Part shown: piece by piece, positions 1 through 61,442 of the stretch
Numbering within the stretch: the stretch's first letter is position 1
How the letters are laid out: the number at the start of each line of letters is the position of its first letter
Origin: Macrostomum lignano
Lineage: Eukaryota
NCBI GenBank assembly: GCA_002269645.1
Contig: NIVC01000107.1
Span: 248,001 to 312,000 of the forward strand
DNA length: 64,000 nucleotides
Direction: 5' to 3'
Notes under the pieces: generated by a model
Database searches by the model: none
What the model was told of the DNA's origin: nothing
Seen by the model: only the letters and a program-made list of their open reading frames with translations
Program-made: the position numbers and the translations under genes

Positions 1-2
1 GC

Positions 3-1274
3 CTCGTCGGTCAGGTCGATGCGGGTGGCGCCAGCCTCCTGGTGAGTCACAGACTCGAACCAGTCGGTCGGAGCCTCCCCGCTTAGAGTCTGGCCTTCTG
101 GCTGTTGGGGTGGAGCGCGAGAAGCGCGGGCCCGCTCACGATGCGCACGAAGGTTCTTGGCCTGGTCCAGCGCGCGCTGGATCAGGCCGGACCTCCGGGT
201 GCTCCTGGCGGGTCTGCGATTGCGATTTCCGGTTTCAGCAGCGCGAACTGCCTTACCGGGCATAGGATCGGCCGTTTGCCTCGGCTTCTTTGCCGGAGGA
301 GCCTGGGCCCCAGTTCCGGTTTCGGAAGCTTTGGCATTCTTGGCTTCATCAGCTTTCCGCTCCTCGCAACGGAGGATGGTCAGCTGAGTCAGACCAATAT
401 GAATTGTGGACTTAGGCGGCAAGCGCTTAGCCCAGTCATCAGAGAGCCCTAGGATCACCGTAGCCCCCTTCTCCTTGCGGGAAGTGGCGTGGTGTAGGAG
501 CCCGTTGACCTTAAGGTCGGGGTGCAGCTTTAGCAATATTTGCCTAAGCTGATCTCCGGACTTAATGGCACTGCCGGCCGGGATCCAGACGCGAAAGCGC
601 TGGGTCTTCTGTCGTTCGCCCTCGCTGGCGAAGACGAGCTTGCCGAGCTTCTTGGGCCAGTTCAGCTTTGGCAGAAGCTCGCGTAGATTGCGGCTGCTCT
701 CCTCCGAGCTGCACCAGATGAAGATGCAGCCGTCGGTCTTGGCAGACTTGACCACGCTCACAGGGCGGCCCGCCAGGAGCTGGTCGATGAGCGCAGCATC
801 GATGGTGCGCCAGGCACTGTCGAGCTCGTCGGCCGTGAGGTCCTGCTCTTCCCCGAAGACGATGACCGCCGGTTGGAGCTTGACCTTTGAGGCGTAGTTG
901 GTGGCGGCGGTTCCCGAAGGCCCGGCCGCGCTTGTAGCAGGTATACTGGGTGGCTCACCAGCGGGGGTTGTATCCTGGGGGGCAGGGGTTGCTGTGGTTC
1001 CTTTCGGCCCAACAGCAGCCTCGCCCTCCCTAGGTTCCCCTTCCGCCGGTGGCCGGCCCGCAGTACCCCGTAGTCGCCGTCGCCGCTCGTTGCGGCGTTG
1101 GTTGCGGGTGCGTCGGGCTTCAGCGGAGGGCCCGGTTGCGCGTGCGGGCATGTCACCAGCCGAGCCGGCGGCAAGCCTATCTGCCCCCGGTGGGGCGGCG
1201 CTGGTGCCAGAGTCACCGGCCGGAGTTGCCGGGGCCCCGGCTTCAGCGGGGGTTAAAGAGGCGGATGACGCCAT
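3..1274 (-). CDS. LINE ORF1 protein, copy A (open to the window edge, absent from the ORF track)
   Basis: Manual translation from ATG 1274: MASSASLTPAEAG...NYASKVKLQPAVIVFGEEQDLTADELDSAWRTID...RFRVWIPAGS...LLKLHPDL...VILGLSDDW, with no stop before position 3. Collinear with the copy B ORF1 (TFAAKAK...QDWTTDQLQKVW...VFVPAKS...LLRLNPDL...IVLGLSSTW). Confidence 0.8.
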   Translation of the reverse strand, partial: MASSASLTPAEAGAPATPAGDSGTSAAPPGADRLAAGSAGDMPARATGPSAEARRTRNQRRNERRRRLRGTAGRPPAEGEPREGEAAVGPKGTTATPAPQDTTPAGEPPSIPATSAAGPSGTAATNYASKVKLQPAVIVFGEEQDLTADELDSAWRTIDAALIDQLLAGRPVSVVKSAKTDGCIFIWCSSEESSRNLRELLPKLNWPKKLGKLVFASEGERQKTQRFRVWIPAGSAIKSGDQLRQILLKLHPDLKVNGLLHHATSRKEKGATVILGLSDDWAKRLPPKSTIHIGLTQLTILRCEERKADEAKNAKASETGTGAQAPPAKKPRQTADPMPGKAVRAAETGNRNRRPARSTRRSGLIQRALDQAKNLRAHRERARASRAPPQQPEGQTLSGEAPTDWFESVTHQEAGATRIDLTDE

Positions 1275-1502
1275 AGCTGAAAGCGGGAAGGAGTGAGCTG
1301 AGTCACAAAAGAAAGAGGAAAGAAGAAAAAGAAAAGGACCGCTAGCGACCGGACAACCCCCCGGCCTTCCAGCCCATCGGCACGGTCAAACACCTTAGGC
1401 ATTAGGGGGTACGTTAAGCAGTACCACGGCCTGCAGGCTGGCAAGCCAGACCCGCATACCCAAATTCGGCCGAAGCCACTGGATGGGTCGCCAGCGTCGG
1501 AG

Positions 1503-1747
1503 CCCAGTCTGTCCAGCAGCCCTAGGGTCTGCCTTGAACACACGCGGGGACGAGTACCCTGGGTCGACTTGTGAAACAGCGTGAGGGGGGGGGGTCTGCG
1601 GCTGCCAGTGGCAAATAGCGGGTGCAGACCTCCCTCTCCAGCCTTGACCTGCTGAATATAGGGGCAGGCGTGAAGCATCGCAGACCGTAGCCCTTAGGCC
1701 TGGTCTGTCTCATACTTCACTGGCGTGCTGAATACACCTTCGCGTGC
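1503..1747 (-). ncRNA. Putative HDV-like self-cleaving ribozyme at the LINE 5' end (copy A)
   Basis: Hand fold: P1 GCACGCG/CGCGUGU, P2 CCCA(G)/(C)UGGG, P3 GGG/CCC, L3 UACUCGU, P1.1 AC/GU, P4 GGCAG-A-CC-CUAG-GG-CUGCU, J4/2 CAGA (candidate catalytic C at 1511). Confidence 0.7.
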
Positions 1748-28987: not shown

Positions 28988-29435
28988 TGGACGCCCATCA
29001 GCCGGAGACCCTGTTTCCCATGAGGCCGGAGCTCCCCATCTCATTTGCGGGATACGTATTCGGCCGCACACTTGTGGGAGATTTGTCCCGCCAGCTTTCC
29101 AAATCCCCGTCAGGGCCGGATCAGCTGCATCAAGTTTCCATCAGCATCACCGCGACTGTCAGGTGCTCGGGCGCGAGGATTTGGCAATGAGGAAGCCGAC
29201 CGAGCTTTGGTGAGAGGCGGATGGGATTTGACTAATCCTGCTGCCCAAGTCCGGTGTTGCGTGACGGGCGGGCGCCTTGCCGACTGAATCGGCCCCGCGT
29301 GTCTGCGGCCCAGCCCTCAGAGGCTGCCGGCATTTCCTGCAGACGGAGCTTTGAAGTGAAGTCCGTTTGTTGCAGCAGCCTTTTTGCTTGGGGCGGAAGT
29401 GTCTGCTGCGAGTTTACCAACTGGCTTGTCATGCA

Positions 29436-32617: not shown

Positions 32618-32679
32618 GGCTGGGGCTCTGGGGACCTCAAATATTCATTTTAGTGACCATTGCACAGTAGTTTCAGCTG

Positions 32680-39269: not shown

Positions 39270-39450
39270 GTCAGGACACCCGGATGTGTGAGCATTCATG
39301 ACAGTCAGATGTGTGAGCATTTATGACACCCGGATGTGTGACTGTTCAGGACACCCGGATGTGTGAGCATTCAGGACACCCGGATGTGTGAGCACTCTGG
39401 ACACCCGGATGCGTGTCAGACTGTCAGGTCAGGTCAAAACACCCGGATGC
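39270..39450 (+). repeat. Short degenerate repeat (caggacacccggatgtgtgagcatt) overlapping the SIDT 3' end
   Basis: Repeated acacccggatg motif; the last copy overlaps the final SIDT codons. Confidence 0.75.
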
Positions 39451-41650
39451 GGTCCCGCGGCACAGTCTCGAGGTCGTCGTCCACGGTGAGCAGCGCCATG
39501 AAGCCGAAGAACACGGCCGCCGATGACAGGAAGTGCCAGACGTCGTGCACATCGTAGAAGCCGGCCAGCACGCAGGCCTGGTTGCGCAGCCGCGATCCGG
39601 CCGCGCTGTCCTCCCAGTTGGCCGGCTGCTGCAGGTAGAAGCGGCCCGCGCCGGCCCAGGCCACCCCGGCCAGGGCCAGGTAGGCCAGAGGCGCCTTGGC
39701 CAGCCTCTCGCCTGAGCGCAGCTTCATCACTAAGTAGTAGAGAAAGTAGGCCAGCGAGTTGGCGGTGAGCACCCAAAGCAGGAAGCTGCCGAAGTCTCTC
39801 GGCCGGGCCAAGGCGCCGTAGAGCCCCAGGCCGAGGTTGGCAGCGTTGGCGACGGCCAGGAGGGCGGCGCGGGCGGGGGCGCGCGGCCAGCCGACGCAGC
39901 GCAGGCTGAGCAGCAGGCTCGCCCCGGTGAGGAGGCCGCAGAACAGGGCGTAGAAAGCGACGCTGCCGCCGCCATAGAAGACGCCAAGCAGGCCGGTGAG
40001 GATGACGATGGCCAGGGCCAGGTAGGCGGCGTGGGCGGGCGCGTTCGAGTCCGGGTGGCGGGCCTGGTAGAGGCACAGGGCGCACAGGCCGCAGAGCATG
40101 TACATGAAGGCCGTGTCGAACTGGAAATTGCTGTAGCTTGGGCAGACGTGATAGCAGGCCGACATGACGCCCTGCATGATGAGCGCCACCCCCATGGCGT
40201 AGTGGAGGCCGTGGTGCTGCGGCAGGCCCAGCGGAGGCTGCAGCGGAGTCCGACGCCCCGGCGGCCGGCGTCGCTGAAGGAGATCGCGGCGCCAGACGAG
40301 CAGCAGGAACAGCAGCCCGAGCAGGCCGTAGCTGATGTTGGAGAAGACGCTGTTGAACGAAGAGATCGGGCCCAGCGGGTGCGAGCACTCGAAGTTGTAG
40401 AAGCAGATGTCCTCGTCCCCGCTGGTGTTGAGCACCCGCTGGTAGGTGAGCACAAGCTGCACGACCGGCAGGCAATAGAAGATGGAGATGATGATGAGGT
40501 ACCAGCAGTACAGCCGGTACTTCTTCCGCAGCCGTCTGGACGGCTTTCTTGCCAGCTCGAGCACCGACGGCGGCGGCTGTGGTGAAGGAGGCGGCAGCGG
40601 CGAGTCCGACTGTGAAGGCAGCACCGGTGGCGGCAACGGTGGTGGCGGTGGAGGCTCCCTGAGCTTCCTTGAGCTGGCCAGGTGGCTGAGGGTGGACAGG
40701 GCCAAGGCTAGCAGGTAGCAAAGCACGTAAAACAGCAGCGTCCACAGCACCGGCCAGCCGTACTGCTCGCTGTGCAGCGACGCCTGCACGTGCAACGTCA
40801 GCCGCTTCACCCGGCCCTGCTGGCGAGTTCCGCTGCCAGCTGGCGGCGACGCTGACGGAGACGCCGCCTCCACTTCGGCTTCCACGCCGCCGCGGCAGTT
40901 GGCGTCGTTCGGGTAGACCAGCAGCACCACGTTGAAGCGGTCGGGCGTCCCGACGGCTGGGTCTCCTCGCCCGATGCTGAGCACCGCTTTCCTGCTGGCC
41001 GTCTGCCGGACGCCCGAGAACTCGACGTTCCGCGCCAGATCGTTGGCCGGGCAGGCCGCCGCCTGGACCGCCAGCCGCATGCAGAGCGCGTCGTTCGACT
41101 GCACGCGCACCTGCACGCTGGTGACGTTCGGCGGGTAGACGAACCTGAAGTACTGCGGCTGCGTGGGCGACACCTCCACTTGGACCGGGGAGTCCAGGCC
41201 CAGCCGGAAGTTGGGGACCAGCGTCGCGCTCAAGCTGAAGCGGATCTGCCGCGGCCTCTGCGACGTCACCTCCACGAAGACGGTGTGGCTGCCCCGCCGG
41301 TGGACCGGGCACAGGGTGCGGGACACCACGCCGAAGCCGGCGTACTCCCCGGACATGGGCAGCCGCCAGGAGATCACCTCCCGCTGCTGCCTGGCCACCA
41401 CCAGCAGCGGGAACTCGGAGTCCGCTTCGTCGCTTTCAACGGAGACTCGAACCGCCGCGTTGGCGCCTCCCGTCGAGCAGTCGTCGGGCGTGGCGTAGGT
41501 GAAGGCGAACACGCGCTCGACGCCTGCGCCGACTGAGCTGCGGTAGACGCGACCGAAGCTTGCCGTCTCGGCGGTCGATGCAGCGTTGGCCGCCTCTAGG
41601 AGCAGCAAGAGCAGCAGGTGGCGAGCCGCCATGCCTGACAGCAAAGCCAT
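39434..41650 (-). CDS. SIDT: SID-1 transmembrane family protein (SIDT1/2-like), intronless, 738 aa
   Basis: Signal peptide; ectodomain PLLVVARQQREVISW, SRTLC, PTQPQYF; FYCLPVVQLV; GDEDICFYNFECSHPLGPISSFNSVFSN; SACYHVCPSYSNFQFDTAFMY; FYDVHDVWHFLSS; DDDL. Confidence 0.95.
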   Translation of the reverse strand: MALLSGMAARHLLLLLLLEAANAASTAETASFGRVYRSSVGAGVERVFAFTYATPDDCSTGGANAAVRVSVESDEADSEFPLLVVARQQREVISWRLPMSGEYAGFGVVSRTLCPVHRRGSHTVFVEVTSQRPRQIRFSLSATLVPNFRLGLDSPVQVEVSPTQPQYFRFVYPPNVTSVQVRVQSNDALCMRLAVQAAACPANDLARNVEFSGVRQTASRKAVLSIGRGDPAVGTPDRFNVVLLVYPNDANCRGGVEAEVEAASPSASPPAGSGTRQQGRVKRLTLHVQASLHSEQYGWPVLWTLLFYVLCYLLALALSTLSHLASSRKLREPPPPPPLPPPVLPSQSDSPLPPPSPQPPPSVLELARKPSRRLRKKYRLYCWYLIIISIFYCLPVVQLVLTYQRVLNTSGDEDICFYNFECSHPLGPISSFNSVFSNISYGLLGLLFLLLVWRRDLLQRRRPPGRRTPLQPPLGLPQHHGLHYAMGVALIMQGVMSACYHVCPSYSNFQFDTAFMYMLCGLCALCLYQARHPDSNAPAHAAYLALAIVILTGLLGVFYGGGSVAFYALFCGLLTGASLLLSLRCVGWPRAPARAALLAVANAANLGLGLYGALARPRDFGSFLLWVLTANSLAYFLYYLVMKLRSGERLAKAPLAYLALAGVAWAGAGRFYLQQPANWEDSAAGSRLRNQACVLAGFYDVHDVWHFLSSAAVFFGFMALLTVDDDLETVPRDRIRVF

Positions 41651-42100
41651 AAACTTGGAGCTGGCAAGTTCTCAGCTGTTATGGGGCTGGCAGAGGGCAT
41701 ACAAGTAGAGTAGGGTGAGAGTGTATACAAGTATGTGAAGTCCAGAACCAGTCCCGAGTCAGCTGAGCTCAGCCAATAAGAGCCGGTCCCTCGGTCTCTG
41801 GAGGCTGCCTATATTCTAGAAGGGTGGATGGCGAATGCAAATCCAAATGAAGTCCTGTGCAGTTCTCAGCTGAGTAGACACTGCTGGCTGATCATTTCGT
41901 GACTTTTCTGCTAGAGAGCTTGGCGAGCATAAGGGCTCAAATCTGGGGGGTGGGGGTGGGGATTAGCGGCTTAGTGAAGGAATAATTCCCTGACCTCAGC
42001 TGCGGCGGGCTCCATCTTTGCCAGCCAAATTGATTTCAATCTTTTCGATCCCTTGCCCGAATCTAATCAGCTGTGTGGGCCCGCCTCTGCGTTCTCTGCC

Positions 42101-42943
<843 letters not shown>

Positions 42944-45900
42944 AGTGCACTTTTGCACAGCTTTCCAAGATAACAGAGAGTCCCGTCCCTCAAAGGGGAT
43001 CGAACTCCAGTTAGACAAGTGGGAGCCTCTAAAGCCAGCTTCCAATCTTCATCAGGCTGTCTGTCCGACGGATCCGGGGGGGGGGGGGGGTTAGAGGCTC
43101 GGGGCCGCAAAGCCGCTGCTAATAACGAATCCTGCAAGGCGACAATGGGGTTTCGGAGTCGGGGATTTCCAATCTGCAGCCAGGATTGCAGCTGCGTCCT
43201 GGGCAGACTAGGAAGCTGCAAGCAACGCGGCACGCTGCATCAGGCACCGGGGGAAATTGCCTTCATTCCGTTTTTTCGGCCGCCATCCGTGCTGGCCAGG
43301 CGAGTTTATTTTTGCCAGACGAACTTTTTGCTAAGCCGGTCTGTGCAAATCTGTTTCATTCTCGATGATCGTCTCTTGCAGAAGCGAAAGCGAGAGCAGC
43401 AGGAGACAACTCAACTGCCTGGCAACAAGATTGAGAGCTGCGTGAGAGCTTATGCCAGGCTGCACTGGAGTGTAAACTGAAACTCGGGCCTCTGTAAGTT
43501 AGCTATAATAGTCGGATATTGAGTTTCTGGGGTCCTTGGCCGGCGGGGCCCTGGAGAGCTGTGGTTCGACAACCTGCTAAGGCGCAGTGGCAGCCCAGTT
43601 ATTACATTATAGGCTGAGGGCATATGATAGTTAAGCAGTGCTTTCAGCCCTGTGAAATGCTTATATTAGTTGGCGCAGCTCTCCATCATCTCTCTCTGAT
43701 TTGATTTCGAGCCCTCGTATCAGCGAGCAGGCTTGAATATGCGGGCCACTGGGACGGTCGGTGCGAGTGTGCCGCGATGGATGGCCATTAGCGCAGCATT
43801 TTTCGAATCCCCGCGGCTGAGACGGCAAGGCCTTTTGCTAAGAAGCCTCGCTGCTCGCCTCGATCGAACCCAATTGGCCTCTCTCGGCAAATATTCGTGC
43901 CGTTGCGTGCCTCGATGCTCGGTATCAGCTGAAAGTACTTTAAGGCCTTGTTGGAAAACATCGGAGAATTTCTGTAGATGTAGTGAATCAGTCGGCGTTG
44001 ACGACGAACGCTCCATAGATGCTGATCATTCAATTTGAGCAAAGAATAACATGTAGCTCGATACGTGCATGTGTACCAGAATGCCCATTCAAAAATGTTA
44101 CTCGTGCATAGAAAAGGTTAATCTCGTTAATACTAAATATTTGTTGCTGCTTCTTGCTCGCTGATGCTTTCCTGCTTTATTATTACTTCTGAAAGACTGA
44201 TGGACGAGAATTATCTAAAAGGCAGTAAAACAATCTAAAACGAAGCATTGGATTGATCGTGTATTTAGGCTGCTACATGTACGTACATGTATACAAGCAT
44301 TTATAGATTTGGGTCGTATAGCACAGGCCATTCTCCATCATGTAGTTAAAGCCATATTTCTCCCATATCCAGAATGCTCAATCAACTGGCAGAATGAGTA
44401 TAGAAATAAAAAATCAAAAATACCACTCTTACTTCCGTGTGAATATAATTACCTGTATATTTAGTAAAATAACCAATTACCACAATTCCGAATATCTTTA
44501 AAAATATATTTGAAGATATTTTAATATATATTTTTATAAAGAAAGCAAGAAAATAGCCAAAGAGCTATGATATGAAGTATTAATTTTAGTATCAGTATAC
44601 ACATGTAGCATAATCGGCAACAGCCTAAAACGGGATATTTGCTAGATAGCTAGCTAGACGGATGGAATACACTGTATAGTGTTTATTAATAAACTAAAAA
44701 AATCTTTCGTGATGAAAAATTAAATAAAGTAAATGTTTTATGAAAAACCGAAGTATAAGCTCACACTTTTTAGATACCTTCGACTATCGTCGTTACTCTT
44801 TTACTCCTTACACTTTTTGGAATTCATTACATTTTATTGTTTGTTATACGAGTTATGGAGTTTAGTGTACAGAAATGCGCACCAGATTGGTTTTATTTTA
44901 ATCTTTTATATTTTAAAGAAGCCATAAATTTTTATTGACTTTCGCCGCCTGGCCCGCCTGGCGCCTGGCCTGCGGGTAGTGTTAGTGTAGTAGTCAGAAA
45001 GTGAGCGATTGCAATGTTGATATTACATCTAGTAACTTCGTGGGCTGATAACTTACTATAAGTTTGTCTAGTCACGTGAATTAAATGCTTATTCAGAATT
45101 CAACCGAAGAGGCGAAGATTAGCTTGCATTATTATCATTCAGTCGGAGTGTCGCTGTCGGGTCTGGCATTGGTCTCACTCACGAAGGATACAGCTAGTCT
45201 ATTGCTTGATGCTCCTGCTGAAGTCTTTATTTTAAATAAAGATAGAAAGAAGTAGATTACTATGTTATTGCAGTGCCAGAGGCAGAGTATTTAAATTCAA
45301 TATCTGTAGGTCTATTCTAGCCTGTACGTAGCTAATGATGTTATCTCTGTTATTAGGCCTAACTTGCCAGTCTATCCCATCTGACAGTGAAAAGTGACAA
45401 TAAAGCCCCTGTTCGTTCATACATTATAAAATTAGCTATAATAGACCTACAATAGTAAACTGACAATGGTCTATAAATGGTTTTAAATTCATTAAATATA
45501 AAAAGCACTAAGAAATAAGATTTTTAATTAAAGGATTAACAAATTAGATTATTATTGTTATAGTTATAGCATCATTGCCCAATTTAACATTAATGTTTTT
45601 AATAAGAAGTTAAAAATAAATTTCGGTAATAGAAACTATTGTGAAAATATATTATTCCCATTGGCATTGTCATTATTACCATAGCAATGATCATGCTATA
45701 GATATGTGCATTAGAAGTTGTGCAAAAATATTATCAATTGTATACTAGGCAACATTGCTAGACAAGTGGTCAATTTGAAATCTCTTAGCTCCTTAGCCTA
45801 GTCCAATATATATATCTAACAATATTTTATATAAAATATGTGAATTTACAGACCATTTTTAATAAAATAGTAACTATTAGTTAACTTACAATACTGCAAA

Positions 45901-46397: not shown

Positions 46398-48047
46398 ATG
46401 GGAAACTCGCATGGTGCATTCTCTAAGGAAGAGCTGGCTGAGTACCAGGAGCTGACATACCTAACTAAGAGAGAGATTATTGAGTAAGTTGGCATCTTTG
46501 AATTTTTAATTGTTAATAAAATCATAATTCCAATGTCTATCTATACTTTCAATTCTCAAACTGCAGGGTCTACAACAGATTTACAAAGATCGATCCACAA
46601 GCACTGAAGGAGGACGCCAGGAATCCCAAGGTGGAATGGGAAAAGATTCTGGCAATTCCTGAACTCAGGGTGAGAGTTTGTATTGGCACATGTCTTTTCC
46701 TCTTCACTGTTCACAGATTCTTATTCACTGTTCACATAGATCTCTTCACTGTTCACAGATACTTATTCACTGTTCACATAGATCTCTTCACTGTTCACAG
46801 ATACTTATTCACTGTTCACAAAGACCTTCATTGTTCAAAAACATCTCTTCACTGTTCACAAAGACCTTTTCACTGTTCACAGATACTTATTCACTGTTCA
46901 CAAAGACCTCTAGTGATCGCAGATTCTTATTCACTGTTCACATAGACCTCTTCACTGTTCACAAAGGCTTTATTAATTGTCAACAAAGACCTATCAGCTT
47001 GCAACCGTCCTACCCGCAGATGAACCCGTTCAAGGAGCGAATAGTTAGCGTGTTCAGCAGCGAGCCGAGCCGCATGTCGTTCGAGGACTTCCTGGACATG
47101 ATGTCCGTGTTCAGCGAGGCGGCGGACAAGGCCACCAAGGTGAAGTACGCCTTCCTCATCTACGATTACGACGGCGATTTGCACATCGGCGAGGCCGACC
47201 TGCGCTGCATCATCCGGGCGCTGACGTCTAATGAGGAGGCCGGGCCGCAGCAGCAGCCGCAGCAGCAGCTCACGGACGATGATGTTGAGAAGCTGGTCAG
47301 CAATGTAAGTAGTGCAGATTTTGAGCAGGTGCAGGGTCCCCGAATCTCCCAGATCCCCAGTCCTCTGCTCTCCTAAATCCCCTGTTCTCTAATCTCCCAA
47401 ATGCCCAGTCCCCAAATCTCCCTAATCCCCAGTTCTCTAATCTCCCAGATCCCCAGTCCCCGAATCTCCCAGTCCCGCATCTCCCAAATCCCCAGTTCTC
47501 TAATCTCCCAGATCCCCAGTCCCCGAATCTCCAAGATAAAATCTCTCAGTCCTAGAATGTCCCAGATCCCCCGTCAGATATCCGTATCTCCCAGATCCCC
47601 AGTCCCCGAATCTCCCAGTCCCACATCTCCCAGATCCCCAGTCCCGCATCTCCCAGATCCCCAGTCCCCGAATCTCTCAGTCCCGCATCTCCCAGATCCC
47701 CAGTTCTCTAATCTCCCAGTCCCGCATCTCCCAGATCCCAGTCCCGCATCTCCCAGATCCCAGTCCCGCATCTCCCATATCCCAGTCCCGCATCTCCCAG
47801 ATCCCAGTCCCGCATCTCCCAGATCCCAGTCCCGCATCTCCCAGATCCCAATCCCGCATCTCCCAGATCCCAGTCCCGCATCTCACATATCCCAGTCAGC
47901 CTGTAAGGCTAAGCCCATTCGAACGGCACCCCGCAGATCCTGGCCGAGTCGGACCGGGACGAGGACCGCAAGCTGTCATTCGCCGAGTTCGAGCACGTGA
48001 TCTCCAAGGCGCCCGACTTTGTGAGCTCATTCCGAATCCGTGTCTAA
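46398..48047 (+). CDS. CIB1: Calcium- and integrin-binding protein (CIB1-like EF-hand); exons 46398-46483, 46567-46669, 47020-47304, 47937-48047 (194 aa)
   Basis: MGNSHGAFSKEELAEYQELTYLTKREII, IPELR|MNPFKERIVSVFS, MSFEDFLDMMSVFSE, EF-hands DYDGDLHIGEAD and DRDEDRKLSFAEF, KAPDFVSSFRI. All junctions are GT-AG and in frame. Confidence 0.92.
46700..46965 (+). repeat. Intronic ~21-bp minisatellite (ttcactgttcacagatacttat)
   Basis: Lies in CIB intron 46670-47019. Confidence 0.9.
47330..47895 (+). repeat. Intronic ~22-23-bp minisatellite (tctcccagatcccagtcccgca)
   Basis: Lies in CIB intron 47305-47936. Confidence 0.9.
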
Positions 48048-52559: not shown

Positions 52560-52878
52560 CCAACCACTTTCCCTAACGACCCCTTTCCCAAACTCTTTTC
52601 CCCAACCCGGCCCTTTCCCAAACTCTTCCCCAACCCCTTTCCCAAACTCTTCCCCAACCCCTTTCCCAAACTCTTCCCCAACCCCATTCCCAAACTCTTC
52701 CCCAACCCCTTTTCCCAAACTCTTCCCCAAACTCTTCCCCAACCCCTTTCCCAAACTCTTCCCCAACCCGGCCCTTTCCCAAACTCTTCCCCAACCCCTT
52801 TCCCAAACTCTTTTCCCCAACCCCTTTCCCAAACTCTTCCCCAACCCCTTTCCCAAACTCTTCCCCAACCCCTTTCCC
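52560..52878 (+). repeat. C-rich ~22-bp minisatellite (ccccaacccctttcccaaactctt)
   Basis: Begins exactly where the Gypsy integrase remnant ends. Confidence 0.9.
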
Positions 52879-52931
52879 GTCCTTGTTCATGCCGGCCCAC
52901 ACGAACTTAGCGGCCACGAGGCGCTGCGTGC
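52879..52931 (-). mobile_element. Distal stub of the Gypsy element (integrase zinc-finger continuation)
   Basis: Reads TQRLVAAKFVWAGMNKD, continuing IHGLAHPSVRSTQRL from ~58830. Confidence 0.85.
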
Positions 52932-53169
52932 ACGCGAAGGCGTATTCAGCATGCCAGTGAAGTATGAGACAGACTAGGCCTACGAGCTAAGGTCTGCGAT
53001 GCTTCACGCCTGCCCCTATCTTCAGCAGGTCAAGGCTGGTGGGAGGTCTGCACCCTCTATTTGCCTCTGGCAGCCGCAGACCCCCCCCCACGCTGTCTCG
53101 CAAGTCGACCCAGGATACTCGTCCCCGCGTGTGTTCAAGGCAGTCCCTAGGGCTGCTGGACAGACTGGG
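52930..53169 (+). ncRNA. Putative HDV-like self-cleaving ribozyme at the LINE 5' end (copy B)
   Basis: P1 52930-52936/53126-53132 (G.U at +1), P2 53109-53112/53166-53169, P3 53113-53115/53123-53125 (A.C mismatch), L3 UACUCGU, P1.1 AC/GU 53133-53134, P4 53135-53160, J4/2 CAGA with C53161. Confidence 0.7.
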
Positions 53170-53447
53170 CTCCGGCGCTGGCGACCCTATCCAGTGGCTT
53201 CGGCCGAATTTGGGTATGCGGGTCTGGCTCGCCAACCTGCAGGCCGTGGTACTGCTCAACGTACTCTCTAATGCCTAAGGTGTTGACCGTGCCGATGGGC
53301 TGGAAGGCCGGGGAGTAGTCCGGTCGCAAGCGGTCCCCCTCCTGGTGTCGGGCCAGCCTTGAGGGTGCTATTGGCCTACTGCCCGGTCAGGTGGAGCGGC
53401 CGGGTGGGTACCGCGCCCCTTTGAGGGTAGCCCACCAACCTTCTATC

Positions 53448-54862
53448 ATGGCCTTCGAGCCGTCTATGGATAAACAAGCTATTTCTAGGGACGGGGACCC
53501 TTCTAAACCCCAACCTCAGTCCGAAGGACCGGCCGGCCCTGCTGGCAGATCCCAACCGACTGATTCAACTGTGGCAAAGGAAGGACCGGCTGGCTCTGCT
53601 GGCAGATCCGACCAGAGCTACCAAACTCAAAATACCTAAAGACCTGCCAGCTCCGCTGGTGGATCTAAGGGAACCGCGAGCTCTGAGCCTAAAGGACCGG
53701 CCAAATCTGGCAGATCCGACGAAGCTCAGCGGGCTCGGCTTGAGCGCAAACGCGCTAAACAACGCGCCAAAAGGCAGGCCAAGAAGGGAGCTGCGGGGGC
53801 CAAAGCGGCGGCGTCCACCATGGATGCTGAAGCGACTGGCGTCCCAAGGCAACCAGACGGGCCGGCCGGTGGAAGCTCCGGTAGTTCAGCGGCGGCGCTC
53901 CCTGGAGATGCTGCTGCGGCTGCTGAGGCCGAAACCACGGCGCAACAAATGGCCACTGCCAACAAGGAGGTTCCTTCGGGAGCTACCTTTGCGGCGAAGG
54001 CCAAGGCCAAAATCCCGGGAGTGATCATCCAAGGTCGCGACCAGGACTGGACCACTGATCAGCTTCAAAAAGTGTGGAGTGCTGTTGATTCCTATCTGAT
54101 TGAGCTGACTGTCGAGGAGGGAATCTCCATCGGCATTGAGCGGATGGTGCTGCGAAGCACATTCGTTCTTATTGCTCCTAGCAGCGAGGAGGACGCTCGG
54201 CAGCTGCTCCAGCGGCTACCGACGGTCTCCTTGGATGCTGACCTTGGCGGAGCTCTTTTTCTTCGCGAGGGCCAGCGTCCAAAGACGATACCCTATGTGG
54301 TTTTCGTCCCTGCTAAGAGCACCGCAGCTGGACCAGACGTTATTCGCCGGGTCCTACTGCGTCTGAACCCCGACCTCCCTGCTAGTGGACTGGTGTATCA
54401 CCGCAAAGTCCGCAGGGGGGAGACGGGCAACTCAATTGTCCTCGGCCTTTCCAGCACTTGGGCGAGTCGGTACCCTAATGATCCTCTTTCCAGCTGGGTG
54501 CCCTCAAGCTCAAGATGCGCCGAGGAAAGTCTGCCAAAGGGAAGGCTACTGCCAACCCCGGCATCTCCGGCAAGAGCGGGGCGCAGTCTAAGGCCCAAGG
54601 AAAGGCGCAAGCCGATCCCAAAGCCAAAGCTGCGTCTCGCCCCTCTGCTAGCAGCAGTTCGGCGACCGCGGTAACGGCTCCGGCCAAGCCCCGGGAACCA
54701 AACCTGCCAGTCGGAGAAGGAGTTGAGGACGAGGCCGGGTCTTCGGAATCCGAGCTCTCCTCGGCCACCCTGGTGGGGTCTGAAGGTAAAGATGCAGGTG
54801 AGGAAGCTTCCTCCATCCTGTCATCGGAGCCTGAGGACTCTGCTGGGGGGCCGGGGGGGTGA
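53448..54862 (+). CDS. LINE ORF1 protein, copy B (frameshifts near 53640 and 54480)
   Basis: Basic/low-complexity N-terminus and a central domain homologous to copy A ORF1; pieces correspond to track ORFs 53391-53639, 53820-54674 and 54515-54862. Confidence 0.7.
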
Positions 54863-54989
54863 GGAGGCCATGGACGTCGACCAACTCCCATCTCCCAGTC
54901 AAGCCCCAGCGGCCTGGGACGAGGACGATCTGTTGTCCAAGTCTCCTTGATGGCCCTGGGCTCTAGCCAGAAATTGCATTTAATACAGT

Positions 54990-57900
54990 ATGACTAAGCT
55001 CCACGCTGCCAAAGGAGCGACATTCTGTCTGCAAATTAATTTACAGCATTGCGTATCTGCGTCACTAAATCTGATGAAGATTGCTGAGCTGTACAGGCCA
55101 GGCCTCATCCTGATCCAGGAACCCTGGATGCGCAACGGTAAGTTGCCCAACATTCCCTCTGGCTACTCTGATTTTTATGTGTGTGGCCCGGGGAACAGTC
55201 GCCCTAGAGCGGCTATCCTCGCTGCTAGCCATCTCCAGGCTTGGCTGAGGACTGATCTCTCTGATGGAGACCTTTGCGTCATCCAATCTAATCATTTCTC
55301 TCCGCGTACGTGTCTTGTTGCCTCGGTTTATATCCCAGGCGACAGAGACCCTGCTCCTGAGAGTTTACTGCGCCTCGCGCAGTACTGCGAGTCCCAGAAC
55401 GCTGAGCTGTGCTTAGGGGGCGACCTCAACGCGCACCACAAGCACTGGGGCAGCAAAGATACCAACACTAGAGGAGAGGAGCTTCTGGCCCTCATCTCTA
55501 ACACAAACCTCATGCTCTGCAACCGCGGCAGCACTCCTACCTTTAATAATGGCAGATGGACCGAGGTCCTCGACGCCACACTCGTTACCCCAAGACTCTT
55601 TGACAGAGTCCAGGAGTGGAGAGTCTGGTCCGAGGAGCCCTCCCTGTCTGACCACTGCTTTATCGCCTTTAACATCGCGGACACTAAAACCCAGTCTCCG
55701 ATCACTTGGAGACGCAATATCCGCAACACTGATTGGGCGGCCTACAAGGCTGCCCTTGATCTGCACCTGCAGGAACTCACGGACTTACGTCCGATTGAGA
55801 CCTGCGAGGATGTGGATCATATGGCTGAGACGCTGACAGGTTGCATTATTGAAGCCTACGAAGCGGCTTGTCCTGCTCGCGCCTACAAAGGCAAGACCTC
55901 GGCGCCGTGGTGGAACCCGGAGCTGGGGAAACTCAGGCGGAAGGCCAAAAGCCTTCATCGCCGTGCCATGAAGACCGGAAACCCGGAGGACATGGAGCTT
56001 TTCCGGCAAGCCTCCCGCAATTTCAAATCTGAAGTGCGCAAGGCCAAGGAATGTAAGTGGCGCCAATTCTGCAATGAATTGGATCAAGACAGACCTACTT
56101 CTAGGCTTGTCAAGGCCCTTACAATGGACAAAATGTCCAAATTAGCCATGATCAAAAAAGATGATGGCTCTCTTACTAAAGACCCTGAAGAAGTGCTTCA
56201 GCATATGCTTAGCACATTCTTCCCGAGGGTACCTACTGCTAGACCGGAGCCCAACCATTCGATGGATGGAGCCACCCTAGCGGCGGGCATTGTCACTGAA
56301 GACCTAATCGCTCGTGCGGTCAGAACCTTCAAACCCTTCAAATCTCCTGGACCTGATGGTATCTACCCTGTTCTCCTTCGTGAAGCAGCCAAGATACCTC
56401 GTTCCTGAGACTCACCCGCAATCTTATGCGGGCCTCTATCCAGCTGGGATACGTTCCCAAATGCTGGACTGAAGCTCGGGTAGTCTTTATTCCCAAACCT
56501 GGGAAGGGCGACTACCAAAGCGTCAAGGCCTTCCGGCCTATTAGCTTAACGTCAGCAATGCTTAAGCTCACTGAGAGGCTTATTCTCTGGCGGCTGCTGT
56601 CCTGCGAGCTGACAGCGATGCCCCTCAGCAATAATCAGCACGCCTTCCGTACCGGGAGGTCGACTGACAGCGCCTGCATGCGATTGTCGAGAAGATTGAA
56701 CGGGCGGTACTGGGTGACGGTTACGCTCTGGCTCTCTTTCTTGACATTGTTGGCGCCTTCGACAACGTTATCTTTGAAGCGTTTCAGAGGGCCCTTCAAA
56801 ATCGCAAAGCTCATGCTACCCTCATACGGTGGATCATGTACATGATCTCCAACCGTACGGTCACTGCCCAACTTCTTGGGCAAACTGCCTCCACCAGAGT
56901 CTGTAAGGGTGGACCCCAAGGCGGAGTCCTCACCCCGACGCTCTGGAACCTGGTCATGGACGCTCTTTTGAGTGACTCCCGACCCGACCCCGTCTTCAAA
57001 GTCGGGTATGCTGATGACGTCACGGCCATTGTGGCAGGACCGTCTCCCAGCACGCTCAGGGATCTGATGCAGAGCTTTATCCGCAAAGCAGAATCCTGGG
57101 CCAATGACAATGGTCTGGAACTCTCTGAGCCCAAAACCGTTGCCATTATGTTTACCAGCAGACTACGCTGGAACATACGTCCTCTGCAGCTCTACGGCAG
57201 AGATATTGCCTTCGCGCACCAGACCAGATGTCTCGGGGTCATACTTGACCACCGGCTCAACTGGTCCTCCCACGTGAAAGCAAAAGCCAAGCGTGCCTCA
57301 GCCATCCTGGCCCAGCTCCGACGAGCACTTGGCACTTCTTGGGGTCTATCCCCAAAGCGGCTTTGGTGGATCTATACTTCCGTAGTTAGACCTGCCATTA
57401 CGTACGCCTCTGTTGTCTGGGTTAGCGCTACCCAGGTCAAAAGCCATGCAGACCTGCTCAACACGATCCAAGGCAGAGCGTGTAGGCTCATCTGCAACGC
57501 CACCAGGTCCACGCCCTTTGCTGGCATGGGGGCCTTCCTTAATCTTCCGCCTCTTGACCTCTTCATCAGGGGTGAGGCGGCTAGAACGACGCGGCGTCTA
57601 ATTGATGCCGGCGTCAAATTCATTTACATGAGAGCACCTGCTAAGCGGAACCTTGTCCCGCATAGCGATCTGTGCCTCAACTTTCTCAACGAGTGTCAGG
57701 CCAATCGCGTCTTCACCGATGGCATTGCCTCAACGCTCAACCTGAGACAGCGCTACTCCGTAGCTATCGACTCGCGCGATAACATCAATGACCAATGGAA
57801 CCCTGGTGAGCTTCATTGCTACACCGACGGTTCTAAGCAGTCAGCCAACACCGCTGGTGTTGGAATCTTTCTGAACGGGAGGGTCATCGCTACCCACGCT

Positions 57901-58725
57901 CAATACACTGGGGTCAACTCCAGTGTTTTCCAAAATGAAGTTCTGGCCATCAGCTCCTGCACTGCAGAGCTTCTCGCCACTGGCGTTACTGGTAAGAACA
58001 TCATTTTCCATTCGGACAGCCAAGCTGCCTTGCACGCCATCAGTGGCTGCAGCACCAACTCTGCTACAGTCCTCGACTGTATCAAACTCCTCAACATGTT
58101 GGGTTCCGCCAACAAAATTACCCTTAAGTGGGTTCCGGGGCATGTGGGGATCCGAGGAAATGAGTTGGCTGACACCCTTGCAAAAGTTGGTGCCTCCGGC
58201 TCCTCTCTCGGTCCCGAACCTCTTGTCCCGATTCCTGGCTGTGTCATCGACTCGCGCATCAAAGCGTGGATCAGGACTCAGCACCGCTCGACTTGGGCGA
58301 ACCGCACGAACTGCAGGCAATCCAGAGGCGCTGTCCCTCAGCCCTCTCACCAGCTCCGGAAGCTCCTCTTGCGCCTCTCGCGCAGAGACATCCGGGCTGC
58401 CACCATGACCCTCTCTGGTCACGGCTGCTTCTCCAGGCACCAGTACCTGCAGGGCAACGCCACCAACGCCACCTGTAGCTTCTGCAACTCAGGTGACGAA
58501 ACCGCTGAGCATTTCGTCAGCATCTGTCCCGCCTTCACGCGGGCCAGACTCACTTACCTCGGGCCACACACATCTATTACTGAAGCGTGCAAACCCGAAA
58601 ACTTTAATCAGCTCATGCGCTACCTTCGGGCCACCCGCAGGGCTGAACTCTCCTTTCCAGAGAGCACCATAGCTGCTGGCGACACTGGGGGACCTCCCTG
58701 GGCGGCGCCAACCCTCCGTCCATAG
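54990..58725 (+). CDS. LINE ORF2: AP endonuclease, reverse transcriptase, RNase H and C-terminal Cys/His motif (frameshifts near 56395 and 56670)
   Basis: QINLQH, LIQEPW, GGDLNAHH-WGS, LSDH (APE); KSPGPDGI, FRPISL, GPQGGVLTP, YADD (RT); YTDGS, NEVLAI, SDSQAA, WVPGHVGIRGNELAD (RNase H); CSFCNSGDETAEH. Confidence 0.95.
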
Positions 58726-58818
58726 CGACGCGTCGGCCGTTCAGGGACTAGCGGAATGGGCGCCCGCGCCTTCCCGCTGTGTCCCCTTCGGGACAGCCCT
58801 GCAGCTAAGTCAAGTAAA

Positions 58819-61442
58819 GAGGCGCTGCGTGCTGCGGACGGACGGGTGGGCGAGGCCGTGGATGGCGTCGGAGAGGGGGCGTCGGAAATTCGGCGGCACC
58901 AATGGGCGCAGCCGGCCCGTGGAGATGTCGCAGAGCAGGGCGACTCCAGGGCTGAGCTGCAGCAGCTCGAGCTGGAGGCTGGCATCGGCCTGGCTGGCCG
59001 ATCGGCCGCCTGCGCCATGGCCGCGAAATCCACGCCGGGGAGCAGCCTGGCCTGCACCGAAGAGACCTTGCAGCGGGACAGCGCGTCTGCGACCGAGTTG
59101 TCCTTGCCCGCCACGTGCTGGATGTCCGTGGTGAACTCGGATACGTAGGCCAGGTGGCGCTGGTGCCAGGCGGACCACGGGTCAGACATCTTGGACATGG
59201 CGGCGACCAGCGGTTTGTGGTCTGTGAAAGCGGTGAATGCGCGGCCCTCGAGGAAATAGCGAAAGTGCCGGACCGCGAACTTCGAAGGCGCTGTACTTCT
59301 GCTCGGGCGGGCAGAGCTGCCGGCTGAAGAAGGCGAGCGGTTGCCAGGCGCTGCCAACCCCCTGCTCGGGCGCCGCGCCGACTGCGGTACCGGAGGCGTC
59401 GACGTTGAGGGCGAGGGGCGCGTCTGGCCGCGGGTGCGCCAGCATGGCGGCGGAGGCCAGCGCCCGCTTTGCTCTGTCGAAAGCGGCGGTCAGCTCGGGC
59501 GTCCACCGGACGAACTTCTCCTTGCCGGCCATGGCCGCATGGATGGGGCGCAGCAGCTGGGCGGCGCGCGGCACGTAGCGGTGGTAGAAATTCACCATGC
59601 CGGCGAACTCCTGCAGGCCCTTGACGGTGGCTGGTGGTGCGAACATGGCGATGGCGTCGACTTTGGTGGGCAGCGGCACGGCTCCCTGGGCGCTGATCCA
59701 GTGGCCGAGGAAGTCGATATCGCTGCGGCCGAACTCGCACTTGGCCGGGTTGACGATAAGGCCGTTGTCGGCCAGGCGCTGGAACAGCGTCCGCAGGTGC
59801 TCCATGTGCTGCTGCCGGCTTTGGTTAGCGACCAAGAAGTCGTCGATGTAGGCGAAGACGAAGTCCAGGTCTTGGAAGACGGAGTCCACCAGCCGCTGGA
59901 AGGCCTGGGCAGCGTTCTTGAGGCCGAACGGCATTCGCAGGAATTCGAAGAGGCCGAACGGGGTAGTGACGGCTGTCTTGGGCACGTCAACTGTGGCCAC
60001 AGGCACCTGGTGGCAGCCACGGACGAGATCGATCTTGGAGAAGGCGCGCTGAGAAGTCCTGGATGTGCCAAGTGCTGTTGATCCGGCGAACGATGCCGAG
60101 CTGCTCCAGGAGCCGGAACTCCTCCTTGGCCACCGCCAGCTTGTCCGGCGGCAGGCGGCGAGGGCGGGCGTGGACCGGCGGGCCCTGCGTCGGGATGTGG
60201 TGCTCCACCCCGTGCCGTGGCGCAGCCCGCTGGAAACTGGGCTCGGTGAGGGCAGGGAACTCGGCCAACAGCTGGCTGTACGGGTCCTCAGCGGTGGCTG
60301 CGGCGAGCTGCAGTCCGGGCCCCGCGCCGTCCAGCAGGTGCACGCTGGCGAGCGAGCGGGCGTCCAGGAGGCGCCGGTGCGGCAGGTCCACCAGCAGGCC
60401 GTGATGCCGCAGAAAGTCGGCGCCGATCAGCGGGCGGGAGACTTCGGCTAGTATGAACGGCCAGGAGCAGCGCCGGATGCCGAGGTCCAACGTGAGCTGG
60501 CAGTGCCGAAGGTGCGGATGAGGCTGCCGTTGGCTGCGAAGAGCGGCGGGCCTGGCGAGTGCAGGCGGGCGTCGGAACCGGCGACGGGGAAAATGCTGAC
60601 CTCGGCGCCGGTGTCGACCAGGAAACGCCAGCCTGTCTGCACATCCGGGATGAGGAGCAGGCTGCTGCTGTTGCCGGCCGTCGAGCTGTTCACTGACGGC
60701 CGGCCTGCCCGTTTCCCTGGAAGCTGTACGGGGGCTCGCAGCGGCGGGCCTTCGCACCGAAGCGACGGTGAAAGAAACACAGGCCGTCGTCCGGGCGGTG
60801 TTGCCGAAGCCGGCTCTGTCTGGCGCCCTTGCTGGCCGCAGAGACCGCCGGCTGGGCTTGCTGGACTGGGTCTGCCGCCGGCTGCTGGACGGAGGCCGCG
60901 ACCAGCTGCGGCCGCCGGCCGGCTGGCCCAGAGCTTGTCCACCTGCTGCGCTGCTGCCCGGGGGTCCGCGAAACTGACGGTTGTCATGGCCATGCGTACC
61001 TCCGGTGGCAGCTGTGGCAGAACAGCTCCTCGAACAGCAGGCAGGGGCGGTGTGGTTCCCCAGCAGGGCGAGCATCTCGTCCATCAGCTCGGACGGCAGC
61101 CGGTCGTCGAGGCCGGACATGCTGAGCAGGCGGCTGGCCCGCTGCTGAGGATTCAAATCGAAAGTGCTGTTGAGGCGCTCCTTTAGCTGAGCGTACTTGT
61201 TCGCATCCGGAAGATCCTCGAGCACATCGAACAGGCGCTCTGCTGTCTGCTGGTCAAGAGCTGCGACGACCAGATGGGCGTACTGTATCGTCCTTGAGTG
61301 ATGCCTCTCGGGGTAACTGAGCTTTGGCCTGGATGAACCAGGCTCGAGGCTGGGCCGCCCAAAACGTGGGCAGCTTCAGGAGGGACCCAGCAGAGTCGGT
61401 TTGTTGGGCCATTGCACGAAATGGCTGCGTAGGGCTCACCAA
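58819..61442 (-). mobile_element. Ty3/Gypsy LTR retrotransposon, degenerate gag-pol (gag ATG 61412), interrupted by the LINE
   Basis: Gag KLPTFWAAQPRAWF, protease FLVDTGAEVS, RT MPFGLKNAAQAFQR...YIDD, RNase H VDASGTAVGA and FTDHKPL, integrase HGLAHP. Several frameshifts and small deletions (e.g. the RT N-terminus at ...NST/WHIQDF). Confidence 0.93.
61428..61441 (-). promoter_or_regulatory. Primer-binding site of the Gypsy element (tRNA-Trp-like)
   Basis: ...gcttCA-T-TGGTGAGCCCTACG follows an LTR-type CA end and matches the vertebrate tRNA-Trp PBS TGGTGACCCCGACG (recalled) at 12/14. Confidence 0.6.

What the first reader, a model, noticed from the sequence alone, without database searches (positions are those of the whole stretch)
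52930..53169. HDV-like ribozyme with a non-canonical AC/GU P1.1 defines the exact 5' end of an RNase H-bearing LINE
Seen: the first 7 nt of the element (GCACGCG) pair with CGCGUGU ~190 nt downstream, with G.U at +1. Every other HDV element follows in the correct order: P2, P3, L3 UACUCGU, P1.1, a P4 hairpin and a CNRA-type J4/2 (CAGA). The usual CC/GG P1.1 is replaced by a compensatory AC/GU. The predicted cleavage G (52930) lies within 2 nt of the TSD boundary. Established: HDV-like ribozymes process the 5' ends of R2, RTE and LOA-clade (Baggins) retrotransposons. Inference: this is an active or recently active variant in an unstudied lineage. The P2/P3 register is ambiguous by 1 nt and copy B has an A.C mismatch in P3.
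Basis: partly seen in the sequence, partly recalled or inferred. Interest (0 to 1): 0.88.

Follow-up and report, generated by a model that had tools for sequence, protein, structure and literature searches.

The report
HDV-like ribozyme candidate at LINE 5' end
The first 240 bases of a flatworm (most likely Macrostomum lignano) LINE retrotransposon can fold into the self-cutting HDV-like ribozyme shape, with the cut falling exactly on the element's first base; this is an untested new example of a known trick, and the same leader also heads a second, different LINE family.

Summary
G52930-G52936 is the only full 7-bp partner of 53126-53132. P3/L3, P1.1, a stable P4 hairpin and a CAGA J4/2 (C53161) follow in HDV order. 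G52930 is the first base of a 5,889-bp APE-RT-RNase H LINE (52930-58818), and a 12-bp target-site duplication abuts it. In 32 Mb of composition-matched random sequence, such a fold starts at a given base with probability 4e-6 (strict P1) to 2e-4 (loose P1), so chance is unlikely. No Rfam model matches. No further copies could be retrieved, so there is no real covariation test and no activity data. Two details are wrong. The A.C mismatch in P3 is in the copy at 52930, not in copy B. "Copy B" (1747-1336, minus strand) is the 5' end of a different LINE family: its ORF1 is only 35% identical, yet it shares a 93%-identical 407-nt leader. The long J1/2 insert (172 nt) and the weak P1.1 both have precedents in R2 and L1Tc ribozymes. 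Verdict: a probable HDV-like ribozyme (about 0.68), a new member of a known kind. The shared leader module is the most interesting extra.

The parts
52918..52929 (+). Left target-site duplication GAGGCGCTGCGT
   Evidence: Exact 12-nt repeat of 58819-58830. It directly abuts G52930. The next 2 nt (GC) are also shared, which makes a 2-nt microhomology.
52930..58818 (+). LINE element A, full length (5,889 bp): leader, ORF1, APE-RT-RNase H ORF2, 3' end ...GTCAAGTAAA
   Evidence: TSDs. Pfam Exo_endo_phos_2, RVT_1 and RNase_H. ORF2 is split over three frames (54990-56408, 56426-56845, 56836-58725), so this copy is defective.
52930..52936 (+). P1 5' strand (GCACGCG); predicted cleavage is 5' of G52930
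   Evidence: 7/7 pairing with 53126-53132. It is the only full partner within 500 nt. The MFE forms it.
52937..53108 (+). J1/2 insert (172 nt), predicted to form four hairpins enclosed by P1
   Evidence: MFE. All 4 A/B substitutions at paired positions of this insert keep pairing. A fifth pair-keeping change, at 53115, lies in P3. The 8 other substitutions and both indels are unpaired.
53104..53112 (+). P2 5' strand: CCCA 53109-12, with a possible extension GUCG 53104-07
   Evidence: Pairs with UGGG 53166-69. The extension pairs with 53173-76 across a 1x3 internal loop (-9.9 kcal/mol). U53105.G53175 in A is U-A in B.
53113..53125 (+). P3 (GGA/CCC) with L3 UACUCGU (53116-53122)
   Evidence: Sequence. 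A53115.C53123 is a mismatch in A and G-C in B. The L3 C (53118) and G (53121) occupy the conserved positions (PMC3774820).
53126..53134 (+). P1 3' strand CGCGUGU (53126-32) and P1.1 3' strand GU (53133-34)
   Evidence: P1.1 is C53118-G53133 plus A53117-U53134.
53139..53157 (+). P4 hairpin
   Evidence: RNAfold -11.1 kcal/mol. The only A/B difference is the bulged base 53144.
53158..53165 (+). J4/2 GGACAGAC with the candidate catalytic C53161 (CNRA = CAGA)
   Evidence: Sequence. Descriptor hit with catalytic C at 53161.
53166..53176 (+). P2 3' strand: UGGG 53166-69, with a possible extension 53173-76
53170..53336 (+). Rest of the leader shared with element B (function unknown; includes a UUCG-capped hairpin at 53197-53206)
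   Evidence: Homology with 1747-1336 ends after GCGGTCC at 53336.
53820..54674 (+). ORF1 of element A (284 aa, no Pfam family)
   Evidence: The only database relative is a Macrostomum lignano UniRef entry, 100% identical over 35%.
58819..58830 (+). Right target-site duplication
1336..1747 (-). Leader of element B (a different LINE family), 92.7% identical to 52930-53336. The ribozyme candidate is 1747-1503: cleavage G at 1747, L3 starts at 1556, candidate catalytic C at 1511
   Evidence: blastn, descriptor hit, alignment.
1..1274 (-). ORF1 of element B, open from the ATG at 1274 to the window edge (at least 424 aa)
   Evidence: Translation. 35% identity to ORF1 of A, E 9e-34.

Best explanation
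The first ~240 nt of the LINE RNA (52930-53169) form an HDV-like, nested double-pseudoknot self-cleaving ribozyme with a large structured J1/2 insert.

Proposed mechanism:
- The element is transcribed as part of a longer transcript, by read-through from upstream or from its own promoter with upstream starts.
- The ribozyme then cuts immediately 5' of G52930, using C53161 in J4/2 as the general acid/base. This leaves a 5'-OH on G+1.
- The RNA is therefore trimmed to the exact element boundary. Full-length target-primed reverse transcription copies it to that base, so the TSD abuts G52930.

By analogy with R2 and L1Tc, the folded leader may also help translation of the uncapped RNA.

The ribozyme is part of a 407-nt leader cassette that has recently been exchanged between two LINE families with 35%-identical ORF1.

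What is shown: the pairings, the exact coincidence with the element end, the TSD, the shared leader.
What is inferred: cleavage itself, its chemistry, co-transcription, a role in translation, and the direction and mechanism of leader exchange.
For: - All helices and junctions are present in HDV order.
- P1 is 7 bp with G.U at +1. It is the unique full partner in 500 nt and is formed in the unconstrained MFE.
- The L3 C and G, the P1.1 G and the J4/2 C-N-R-A are at the conserved positions named in PMC3774820.
- There is a stable P4 of -11.1 kcal/mol.
- P1 starts on the very nucleotide defined as the element end by a 12-bp TSD and by the start of homology with an independent element.
- The chance of such a fold starting at a given base is 4.1e-6 (strict) to 1.8e-4 (loose).
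- Element B, which has an intact ORF1, has a perfect P3.
- Substitutions between A and B spare or preserve the predicted pairs: 5 of 5 at paired sites keep pairing. The core has 2/61 differences against 12 substitutions plus 5 indel bases in the 172-nt J1/2.
- Precedents exist: ribozyme-defined 5' ends in R4, Dong, baggins and L1Tc; J1/2 of 216-498 nt; structured J1/2 domains that activate the ribozyme; a 1-bp P1.1 in the active L1TcRz; L1Tc is APE-RT-RNase H with 12-bp TSDs.
Against: - No Rfam HDV-type family matches, even at E<=10 on 86 nt.
- The core descriptor alone is unspecific. It gives about 40 hits per strand in the window, and C is not enriched over A/G/U controls.
- Contiguous P2 is only 4 bp (-4.1 kcal/mol).
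- An extra C53165 sits between CNRA and P2.
- Copy A has an A.C in P3.
- An alternative hairpin (GUUCA 53133-37 with UGGAC 53157-61) would sequester the P1.1 G and the catalytic C, and it appears in MFE folds.
- The whole-region folding z-score is only -1.5.
- There is no compensatory double change in any core helix, because only two near-identical sequences exist.
- The one retrievable relative with a 5' UTR (L003) shows no HDV core.
- The descriptor's tolerances were set after seeing the candidate.
Confidence: 0.68

Rival explanations
1. Chance resemblance. The 5' end at G52930 is set by an internal RNA polymerase II promoter that starts at +1, as in many LINEs. The leader is structured for other reasons (promoter, ORF1p or ORF2p binding, translation), and the HDV-like pairings have no catalytic meaning.
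For: - No Rfam hit.
- The core descriptor is unspecific and shows no C-over-control enrichment.
- P2 is short, and competing hairpins appear in the MFE.
- There is no covariation.
- Relative L003 has no such motif.
Against: The full fold with P1 anchored on the exact terminal nucleotide has a chance rate of 4e-6 to 2e-4 per position. All the conserved nucleotides and a well-placed P4 come in addition to that. Ribozyme-defined 5' ends are common in LINEs of this build.
Confidence: 0.17
2. A decayed relic. An ancestor of the leader carried a working HDV-like ribozyme, but the versions now in the genome (weak P2, A-U in P1.1, A.C in P3 of copy A) no longer cleave at a useful rate. The leader now serves mainly as promoter or UTR.
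For: - Copy A has ORF2 in three frames and a P3 mismatch.
- P2 is 4 bp contiguous.
- P1.1 is weaker than the usual two G-C pairs.
Against: - Element B has an open ORF1 of at least 424 aa and a perfect P3.
- Both elements begin exactly at G+1. This is expected only if cleavage, or an equally precise start, operated when they were inserted.
- Active natural ribozymes tolerate a 1-bp P1.1 and P2 mismatches.
Confidence: 0.15

Closest known systems
L1TcRz / Pr77 of the Trypanosoma cruzi L1Tc LINE (ingi clade)
   Same: An HDV-like ribozyme at the very first nucleotides of an APE-RT-RNase H LINE flanked by about 12-bp TSDs. P1.1 is non-canonical and weak. The same 5' signature is shared by several element families (L1Tc, NARTc, ingi, SIDERs) (PMC3185411, PMC4035085, PMC6765202).
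   Different: L1TcRz is compact (77 nt, no large J1/2). Here the two P1 strands are 189 nt apart. There is no sequence similarity. The host is a flatworm rather than a kinetoplastid. Promoter activity of the leader is not known here.
R2 / R4 / Dong ribozymes (Eickbush laboratory)
   Same: The double-pseudoknot fold has a very long, poorly conserved J1/2 (216-498 nt in silkmoths; P1 to P1' up to more than 700 nt). P2 mismatches and P3/P1.1 disruptions are tolerated. In R4, Dong and Drosophila R2, cleavage is at the exact element 5' end, and 5' junctions form by microhomology (PMC3774820).
   Different: R2-type elements use a restriction-like endonuclease, insert site-specifically in rDNA and lack RNase H. 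This element is an APE-type LINE inserted in another retrotransposon.
baggins (LOA clade) and the mosquito drz-Agam-2 HDV-like ribozymes with a P1.2 peripheral domain
   Same: HDV-like ribozymes at LINE 5' ends. A structured J1/2 domain brings P1 and P2 together and accelerates cleavage (PMC4908430). baggins is listed among elements cleaved at their 5' end.
   Different: In drz-Agam-2 the insert is a single P1.2 helix. Here the predicted insert is a row of four hairpins with no obvious closing helix. Clade membership of the present LINE was not determined.
Mammalian CPEB3 ribozyme
   Same: From my own knowledge of that sequence: a 7-nt L3, a weakened P1.1 and a CNRA J4/2.
   Different: It is intronic and not part of a retrotransposon. 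It is compact. The Rfam CPEB3 model does not match here.

Membership tests
HDV-like self-cleaving ribozyme | Nested double-pseudoknot order: P1-5', (J1/2), P2-5', P3-5', L3, P3-3', P1-3', P1.1, P4, J4/2, P2-3' | tested here: met
   All segments are found in this order at 52930-53169, and again at 1747-1503 (minus strand).
HDV-like self-cleaving ribozyme | P1 of 6-7 bp starting at the cleavage site, usually with a G.U wobble at +1 | tested here: met
   7 bp, with G52930.U53132 plus six Watson-Crick pairs. It is the only 7/7 partner in 500 nt.
HDV-like self-cleaving ribozyme | 3-bp P3 closing a 7-8-nt L3 with the conserved C and G | tested here: met
   GGG/CCC in element B. GGA/CCC (one A.C) in element A. 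L3 is UACUCGU, with C53118 and G53121. The conserved L3 C and G are named in PMC3774820.
HDV-like self-cleaving ribozyme | P1.1: L3 nucleotides pair with the 1-2 nt right after P1-3' (usually two G-C pairs) | tested here: met
   C53118-G53133 and A53117-U53134. The outer pair is A-U instead of C-G. The active L1TcRz has only 1 bp.
HDV-like self-cleaving ribozyme | Catalytic C as the first base of a C-N-R-A J4/2, directly before P2-3' | tested here: met
   C53161-A-G-A. One extra base (C53165) precedes P2-3', unless it pairs with G53113.
HDV-like self-cleaving ribozyme | P2 of at least 5 bp (mismatches tolerated in about a third of R2 ribozymes) | tested here: inconclusive
   4 contiguous bp (-4.1 kcal/mol). 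It becomes 5 bp if G53113-C53165 is counted, or 8 bp with a 1x3 internal loop (-9.9 kcal/mol). The criterion is from PMC3774820.
HDV-like self-cleaving ribozyme | Covariation supporting the helices across homologues | tested here: inconclusive
   Only two sequences, 93% identical. There are five one-sided, pair-keeping changes and no double compensatory change. No further copies were found.
HDV-like self-cleaving ribozyme | Mg2+-dependent site-specific self-cleavage, abolished by C-to-U at the catalytic C | not testable with these tools
   Needs in vitro transcription and cleavage assays.
Rfam HDV-type families (HDV_ribozyme, CPEB3_ribozyme, drz-Agam families and others in Rfam 15) | Score at or above the family gathering threshold | tested here: not met
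   There is no match at gathering score on the window. There is none at E<=10 on 52800-53500 or on 53095-53180. So this is not a member of any curated sequence family, only of the structural class.
APE-type LINE with RNase H (I/LOA/ingi/Tad-like build) | APE endonuclease, RT and RNase H domains in ORF2; TSDs; a separate ORF1 | tested here: met
   Pfam Exo_endo_phos_2 3.2e-21; RVT_1 4.7e-11 (best fragment, ORF 56836-58725); RNase_H 2.6e-11. 12-bp TSD. ORF1 of 284 aa. The clade itself was not determined.

The most novel reading that the evidence does not exclude
The ribozyme sits in a portable 407-nt leader cassette that moves between LINE families. Two families whose ORF1 proteins are only 35% identical carry 93%-identical leaders that start at the same G. 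This suggests recent capture of a ribozyme-bearing 5' module, by template switching or recombination, as a way for a LINE lineage to acquire precise 5' processing and perhaps cap-independent translation. The A-U-containing P1.1 and the four-hairpin J1/2 would then define a distinct flatworm subtype of HDV-like ribozyme.
Probability: 0.45. Interest if true: 0.55.

Novelty: new member of a known kind. Interest (0 to 1): 0.42.

Why it matters
If cleavage is confirmed, three things follow. First, it extends ribozyme-defined LINE 5' ends to a free-living flatworm that is a laboratory model with transgenesis (PMC5730564); two text searches found no report of a ribozyme in Macrostomum. Second, it adds a natural example with an A-U pair in P1.1 and a multi-hairpin J1/2. 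Third, it gives a clear case of a ribozyme-bearing leader shared by two divergent LINE families, which bears on how LINEs replace their 5' ends. It would not change the general picture, since HDV-like ribozymes at LINE 5' ends are well established.

Tried and rejected
- Rfam 15 at gathering score on the whole window, and at E<=10 on 701 nt and on 86 nt around the core. There was no HDV-type hit. The only match was a chance hit to a mycobacterial sRNA at 53281-53375.
- Search for more copies:
  - An exact look-up of ORF1 found nothing.
  - The ORF1 homologue search gave one M. lignano UniRef entry without DNA.
  - The ORF2 search gave M. lignano UniRef entries without contigs, plus distant relatives.
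  - The pattern GGRTACTCGTCCC-N7-GTTCAAGG gave one hit each in metagenome and prokaryotic genome contigs. One is a fungal-looking contig and the other a Thermomicrobiales MAG, with no LINE context; both were judged chance.
  - The viral contig scan found no relative.
- Relatives with flanks (L003, L004, L005):
  - L003 is a near-complete relative (ORF1 26% identical, RT-RNase H 42%). Its 448-nt 5' UTR has no similarity to the leader and no HDV core by my descriptor.
  - Hits in L004 and L005 appear equally with the C-to-A/G/U control descriptors and were rejected.
- The idea that copy B is a 3'-truncated copy of the same LINE was rejected, because an intact, divergent ORF1 follows it.
- The alternative P3 register (A53115-U53122, 6-nt L3, one unpaired C before P1-3') was considered. 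It was judged less likely, because it shortens L3 below the usual 7-8 nt and element B fits the GGG/CCC register perfectly.
- A nearer P1 5' strand (CACGC 53089-53093) gives only 5 bp without a G.U at the start, so it was rejected.
- Whole-region folding z-scores (-1.5 and -1.65) are uninformative for a pseudoknot.

Full report
**What is there.** The window is eukaryotic and almost certainly from the flatworm Macrostomum lignano.
- The RT-RNase H ORF matches M. lignano UniRef entries at 77-95% identity.
- The only relative of ORF1 is an M. lignano entry, identical over the aligned part.

A 5,889-bp LINE lies on the + strand at 52930-58818. Its parts are:
- a 12-bp target-site duplication, GAGGCGCTGCGT, at 52918-29 and 58819-30, with 2 further shared bases;
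- an 890-nt 5' UTR;
- ORF1 at 53820-54674, with no Pfam family;
- an ORF2 with APE endonuclease, reverse transcriptase and RNase H domains;
- a 3' end of ...GTCAAGTAAA.

ORF2 is split over three reading frames, so this copy is dead. The element is inserted into the pol region (RVT_1, RT_RNaseH) of an LTR-type retroelement on the minus strand.

| Element | Coordinates and sequence |
|---|---|
| P1 | GCACGCG 52930-36 with CGCGUGU 53126-32, G.U at +1 |
| P2 | CCCA 53109-12 with UGGG 53166-69 |
| P3 | GGA 53113-15 with CCC 53123-25 |
| L3 | UACUCGU 53116-22 |
| P1.1 | C53118-G53133 and A53117-U53134 |
| P4 | hairpin 53139-57, -11.1 kcal/mol |
| J4/2 | candidate catalytic C53161 in CAGA |

- P1 is the only full 7-bp partner of the 3' strand within 500 nt.
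- P1 forms in the unconstrained minimum-energy fold of 52930-53132.
- The 172-nt J1/2 insert folds into four hairpins.
- P2 is the weak point. It has four contiguous pairs. It can be extended by 53104-07 with 53173-76 across a small internal loop (-9.9 kcal/mol).

**Is it more than chance?** I wrote a descriptor with these requirements:
- the conserved L3 C and G;
- a P1.1 G;
- C-N-R-A before P2;
- a 3-bp P3 with at most 1 mismatch;
- P2 of at least 4 bp;
- P1 within 300 nt upstream.

The core alone is unspecific. It gives about 40 hits per strand of the window, with no excess of C over A/G/U at the catalytic position.

Requiring a P1 with G.U plus six Watson-Crick pairs leaves three hits in 128 kb. 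Two are the leader copies and one is spurious, at 46302/46616. The three control descriptors give three hits in total.

In 32 Mb of Markov sequence with the element's composition, such a fold starts at a given nucleotide with probability 4.1e-6. With any 7-bp P1 the probability is 1.8e-4.

The decisive point is therefore position. The fold starts on exactly the base that both the TSD and an independent second element define as the 5' end. The well-placed P4 is not counted in that estimate.

**What does not support it.**
- No Rfam HDV-type model matches at any threshold. This is expected for a class described as having only about five conserved nucleotides (PMC4870747). It does mean the candidate belongs to no curated sequence family.
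- An alternative hairpin (53133-37 with 53157-61) would sequester the P1.1 G and C53161, and it appears in nested MFE folds.
- No further copies could be obtained from any collection.
- The nearest relative with a 5' UTR (L003; ORF1 26% identical, RT-RNase H 42% identical) shows neither similarity nor an HDV core.

Covariation therefore rests on two sequences only.
- Five substitutions fall at predicted paired positions, and all keep pairing through one-sided changes: C-G/U.G, G.U/G-C, U.G/C-G, C-G/U.G and A-U/G.U.
- Eight substitutions and both indels fall in unpaired positions.
- The 61-nt core has 2 differences. The 172-nt J1/2 has 12 substitutions plus 5 indel bases.
- This is consistent with the structure, but weak.

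- The A.C mismatch in P3 is in the copy at 52930 (A53115). The other copy has G and a perfect GGG/CCC.
- "Copy B" is not another copy of this LINE. The shared sequence is 52930-53336 against 1747-1336, at 92.7% identity.
- After the shared sequence, element B runs through a short polypyrimidine stretch into an open reading frame. That frame is open from the ATG at 1274 to the window edge, at least 424 aa.
- Its product is only 35% identical to ORF1 of element A (E 9e-34).
- So two different LINE families carry the same 407-nt leader, and both start at the same G.
- Given the protein divergence, the leader must have been exchanged recently between families rather than conserved throughout. This is an inference.

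**Comparison with what is known.** HDV-like ribozymes at LINE 5' ends are well established.
- R2, R4, Dong, baggins and L1Tc all have them, with cleavage at the exact element end in R4, Dong, baggins and L1Tc (PMC3774820).
- A long J1/2 is not unusual. It is 216-498 nt in silkmoth R2, and the P1 to P1' distance exceeds 700 nt in honeybee.
- Structured J1/2 domains activate the ribozyme (PMC4908430).
- P1.1 varies. The active L1TcRz has a single pair (PMC3185411), and trypanosomatid ribozymes differ in P1.1 composition (PMC4035085).
- L1Tc is itself an APE-RT-RNase H LINE with 12-bp TSDs. Its 5' signature is shared by several element families (PMC6765202).

The closest analogue is therefore L1TcRz/Pr77 in function and context, and R2 ribozymes in architecture. 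Two text searches found no report of a ribozyme in Macrostomum.

**Verdict.** This is a probable HDV-like ribozyme that defines the 5' end of a flatworm LINE (confidence about 0.68). It is untested for activity and is a new member of a known kind. The features stressed as unusual fall within published variation. The shared leader cassette is the most interesting new point.

Noticed in passing
window 1-1747 (minus strand) versus 52930-54674: Two LINE families whose ORF1 proteins are 35% identical share a 93%-identical 407-nt 5' leader that begins at the same G. Homology stops abruptly after GCGGTCC (53336 / 1336). This points to recent exchange of the leader between families.
   Followed up: partly
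window 54990-58725: ORF2 of element A lies in three different frames (54990-56408, 56426-56845, 56836-58725). That implies at least two frameshifts inside the RT region, so the copy is defective although its TSDs are perfect.
   Followed up: partly
window 58620-61225 (minus strand): Element A is inserted into the pol region of an LTR-type retroelement (Pfam RVT_1 2.5e-21, RT_RNaseH_2 2.8e-19) that reads on the minus strand.
   Followed up: partly
window 52929 / 53133: In element A the base before the cleavage site (U52929) could pair with G53133. This would extend P1 by a wobble pair and compete with P1.1. Such an effect is reported to reduce cleavage in L1Tc and R2 (PMC3185411). Element B has G at -1 and cannot do this.
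   Followed up: no
window 53170-53336, e.g. 53197-53206: The part of the shared leader downstream of the ribozyme candidate is as well conserved as the rest. It contains a UUCG-capped hairpin (GGCUUCGGCC). Its function is unknown. A weak Rfam match to a mycobacterial sRNA at 53281-53375 (E 0.089) is taken as chance.
   Followed up: no
window 2.5-52.9 kb, e.g. 41941-43000 (8-nt period), 29335-30900 (22-nt), 7797-8855 / 28344-29108 / 32558-33250 (40-nt, one array inverted), 52580-52927 (12-13-nt, directly upstream of element A): The window is packed with mini- and microsatellite arrays of many periods. The same 40-nt repeat occurs in three arrays, one in inverted orientation (98% complementary over 516 nt).
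   Followed up: no
window 39434-41650 (-), 10274-11572 (-), 46678-47376 (+): Host gene fragments: a SID-1 dsRNA channel homologue (Pfam E 2.5e-164), an aldehyde dehydrogenase fragment (1.5e-45) and an EF-hand ORF (E 2.6e-06, 28.1 bits, just under Pfam's 30-bit cut-off). The one spurious hit of my HDV descriptor (P1 at 46302, L3 at 46616) lies just upstream of the EF-hand ORF.
   Followed up: no
L003 (JGI metagenome contig Ga0450781_086094, 5,211 nt): A near-complete relative of this LINE lineage from an environmental sample, with ORF1 (288 aa), APE and RT-RNase H. Its 448-nt 5' UTR has no similarity to the leader and no HDV-like core.
   Followed up: partly
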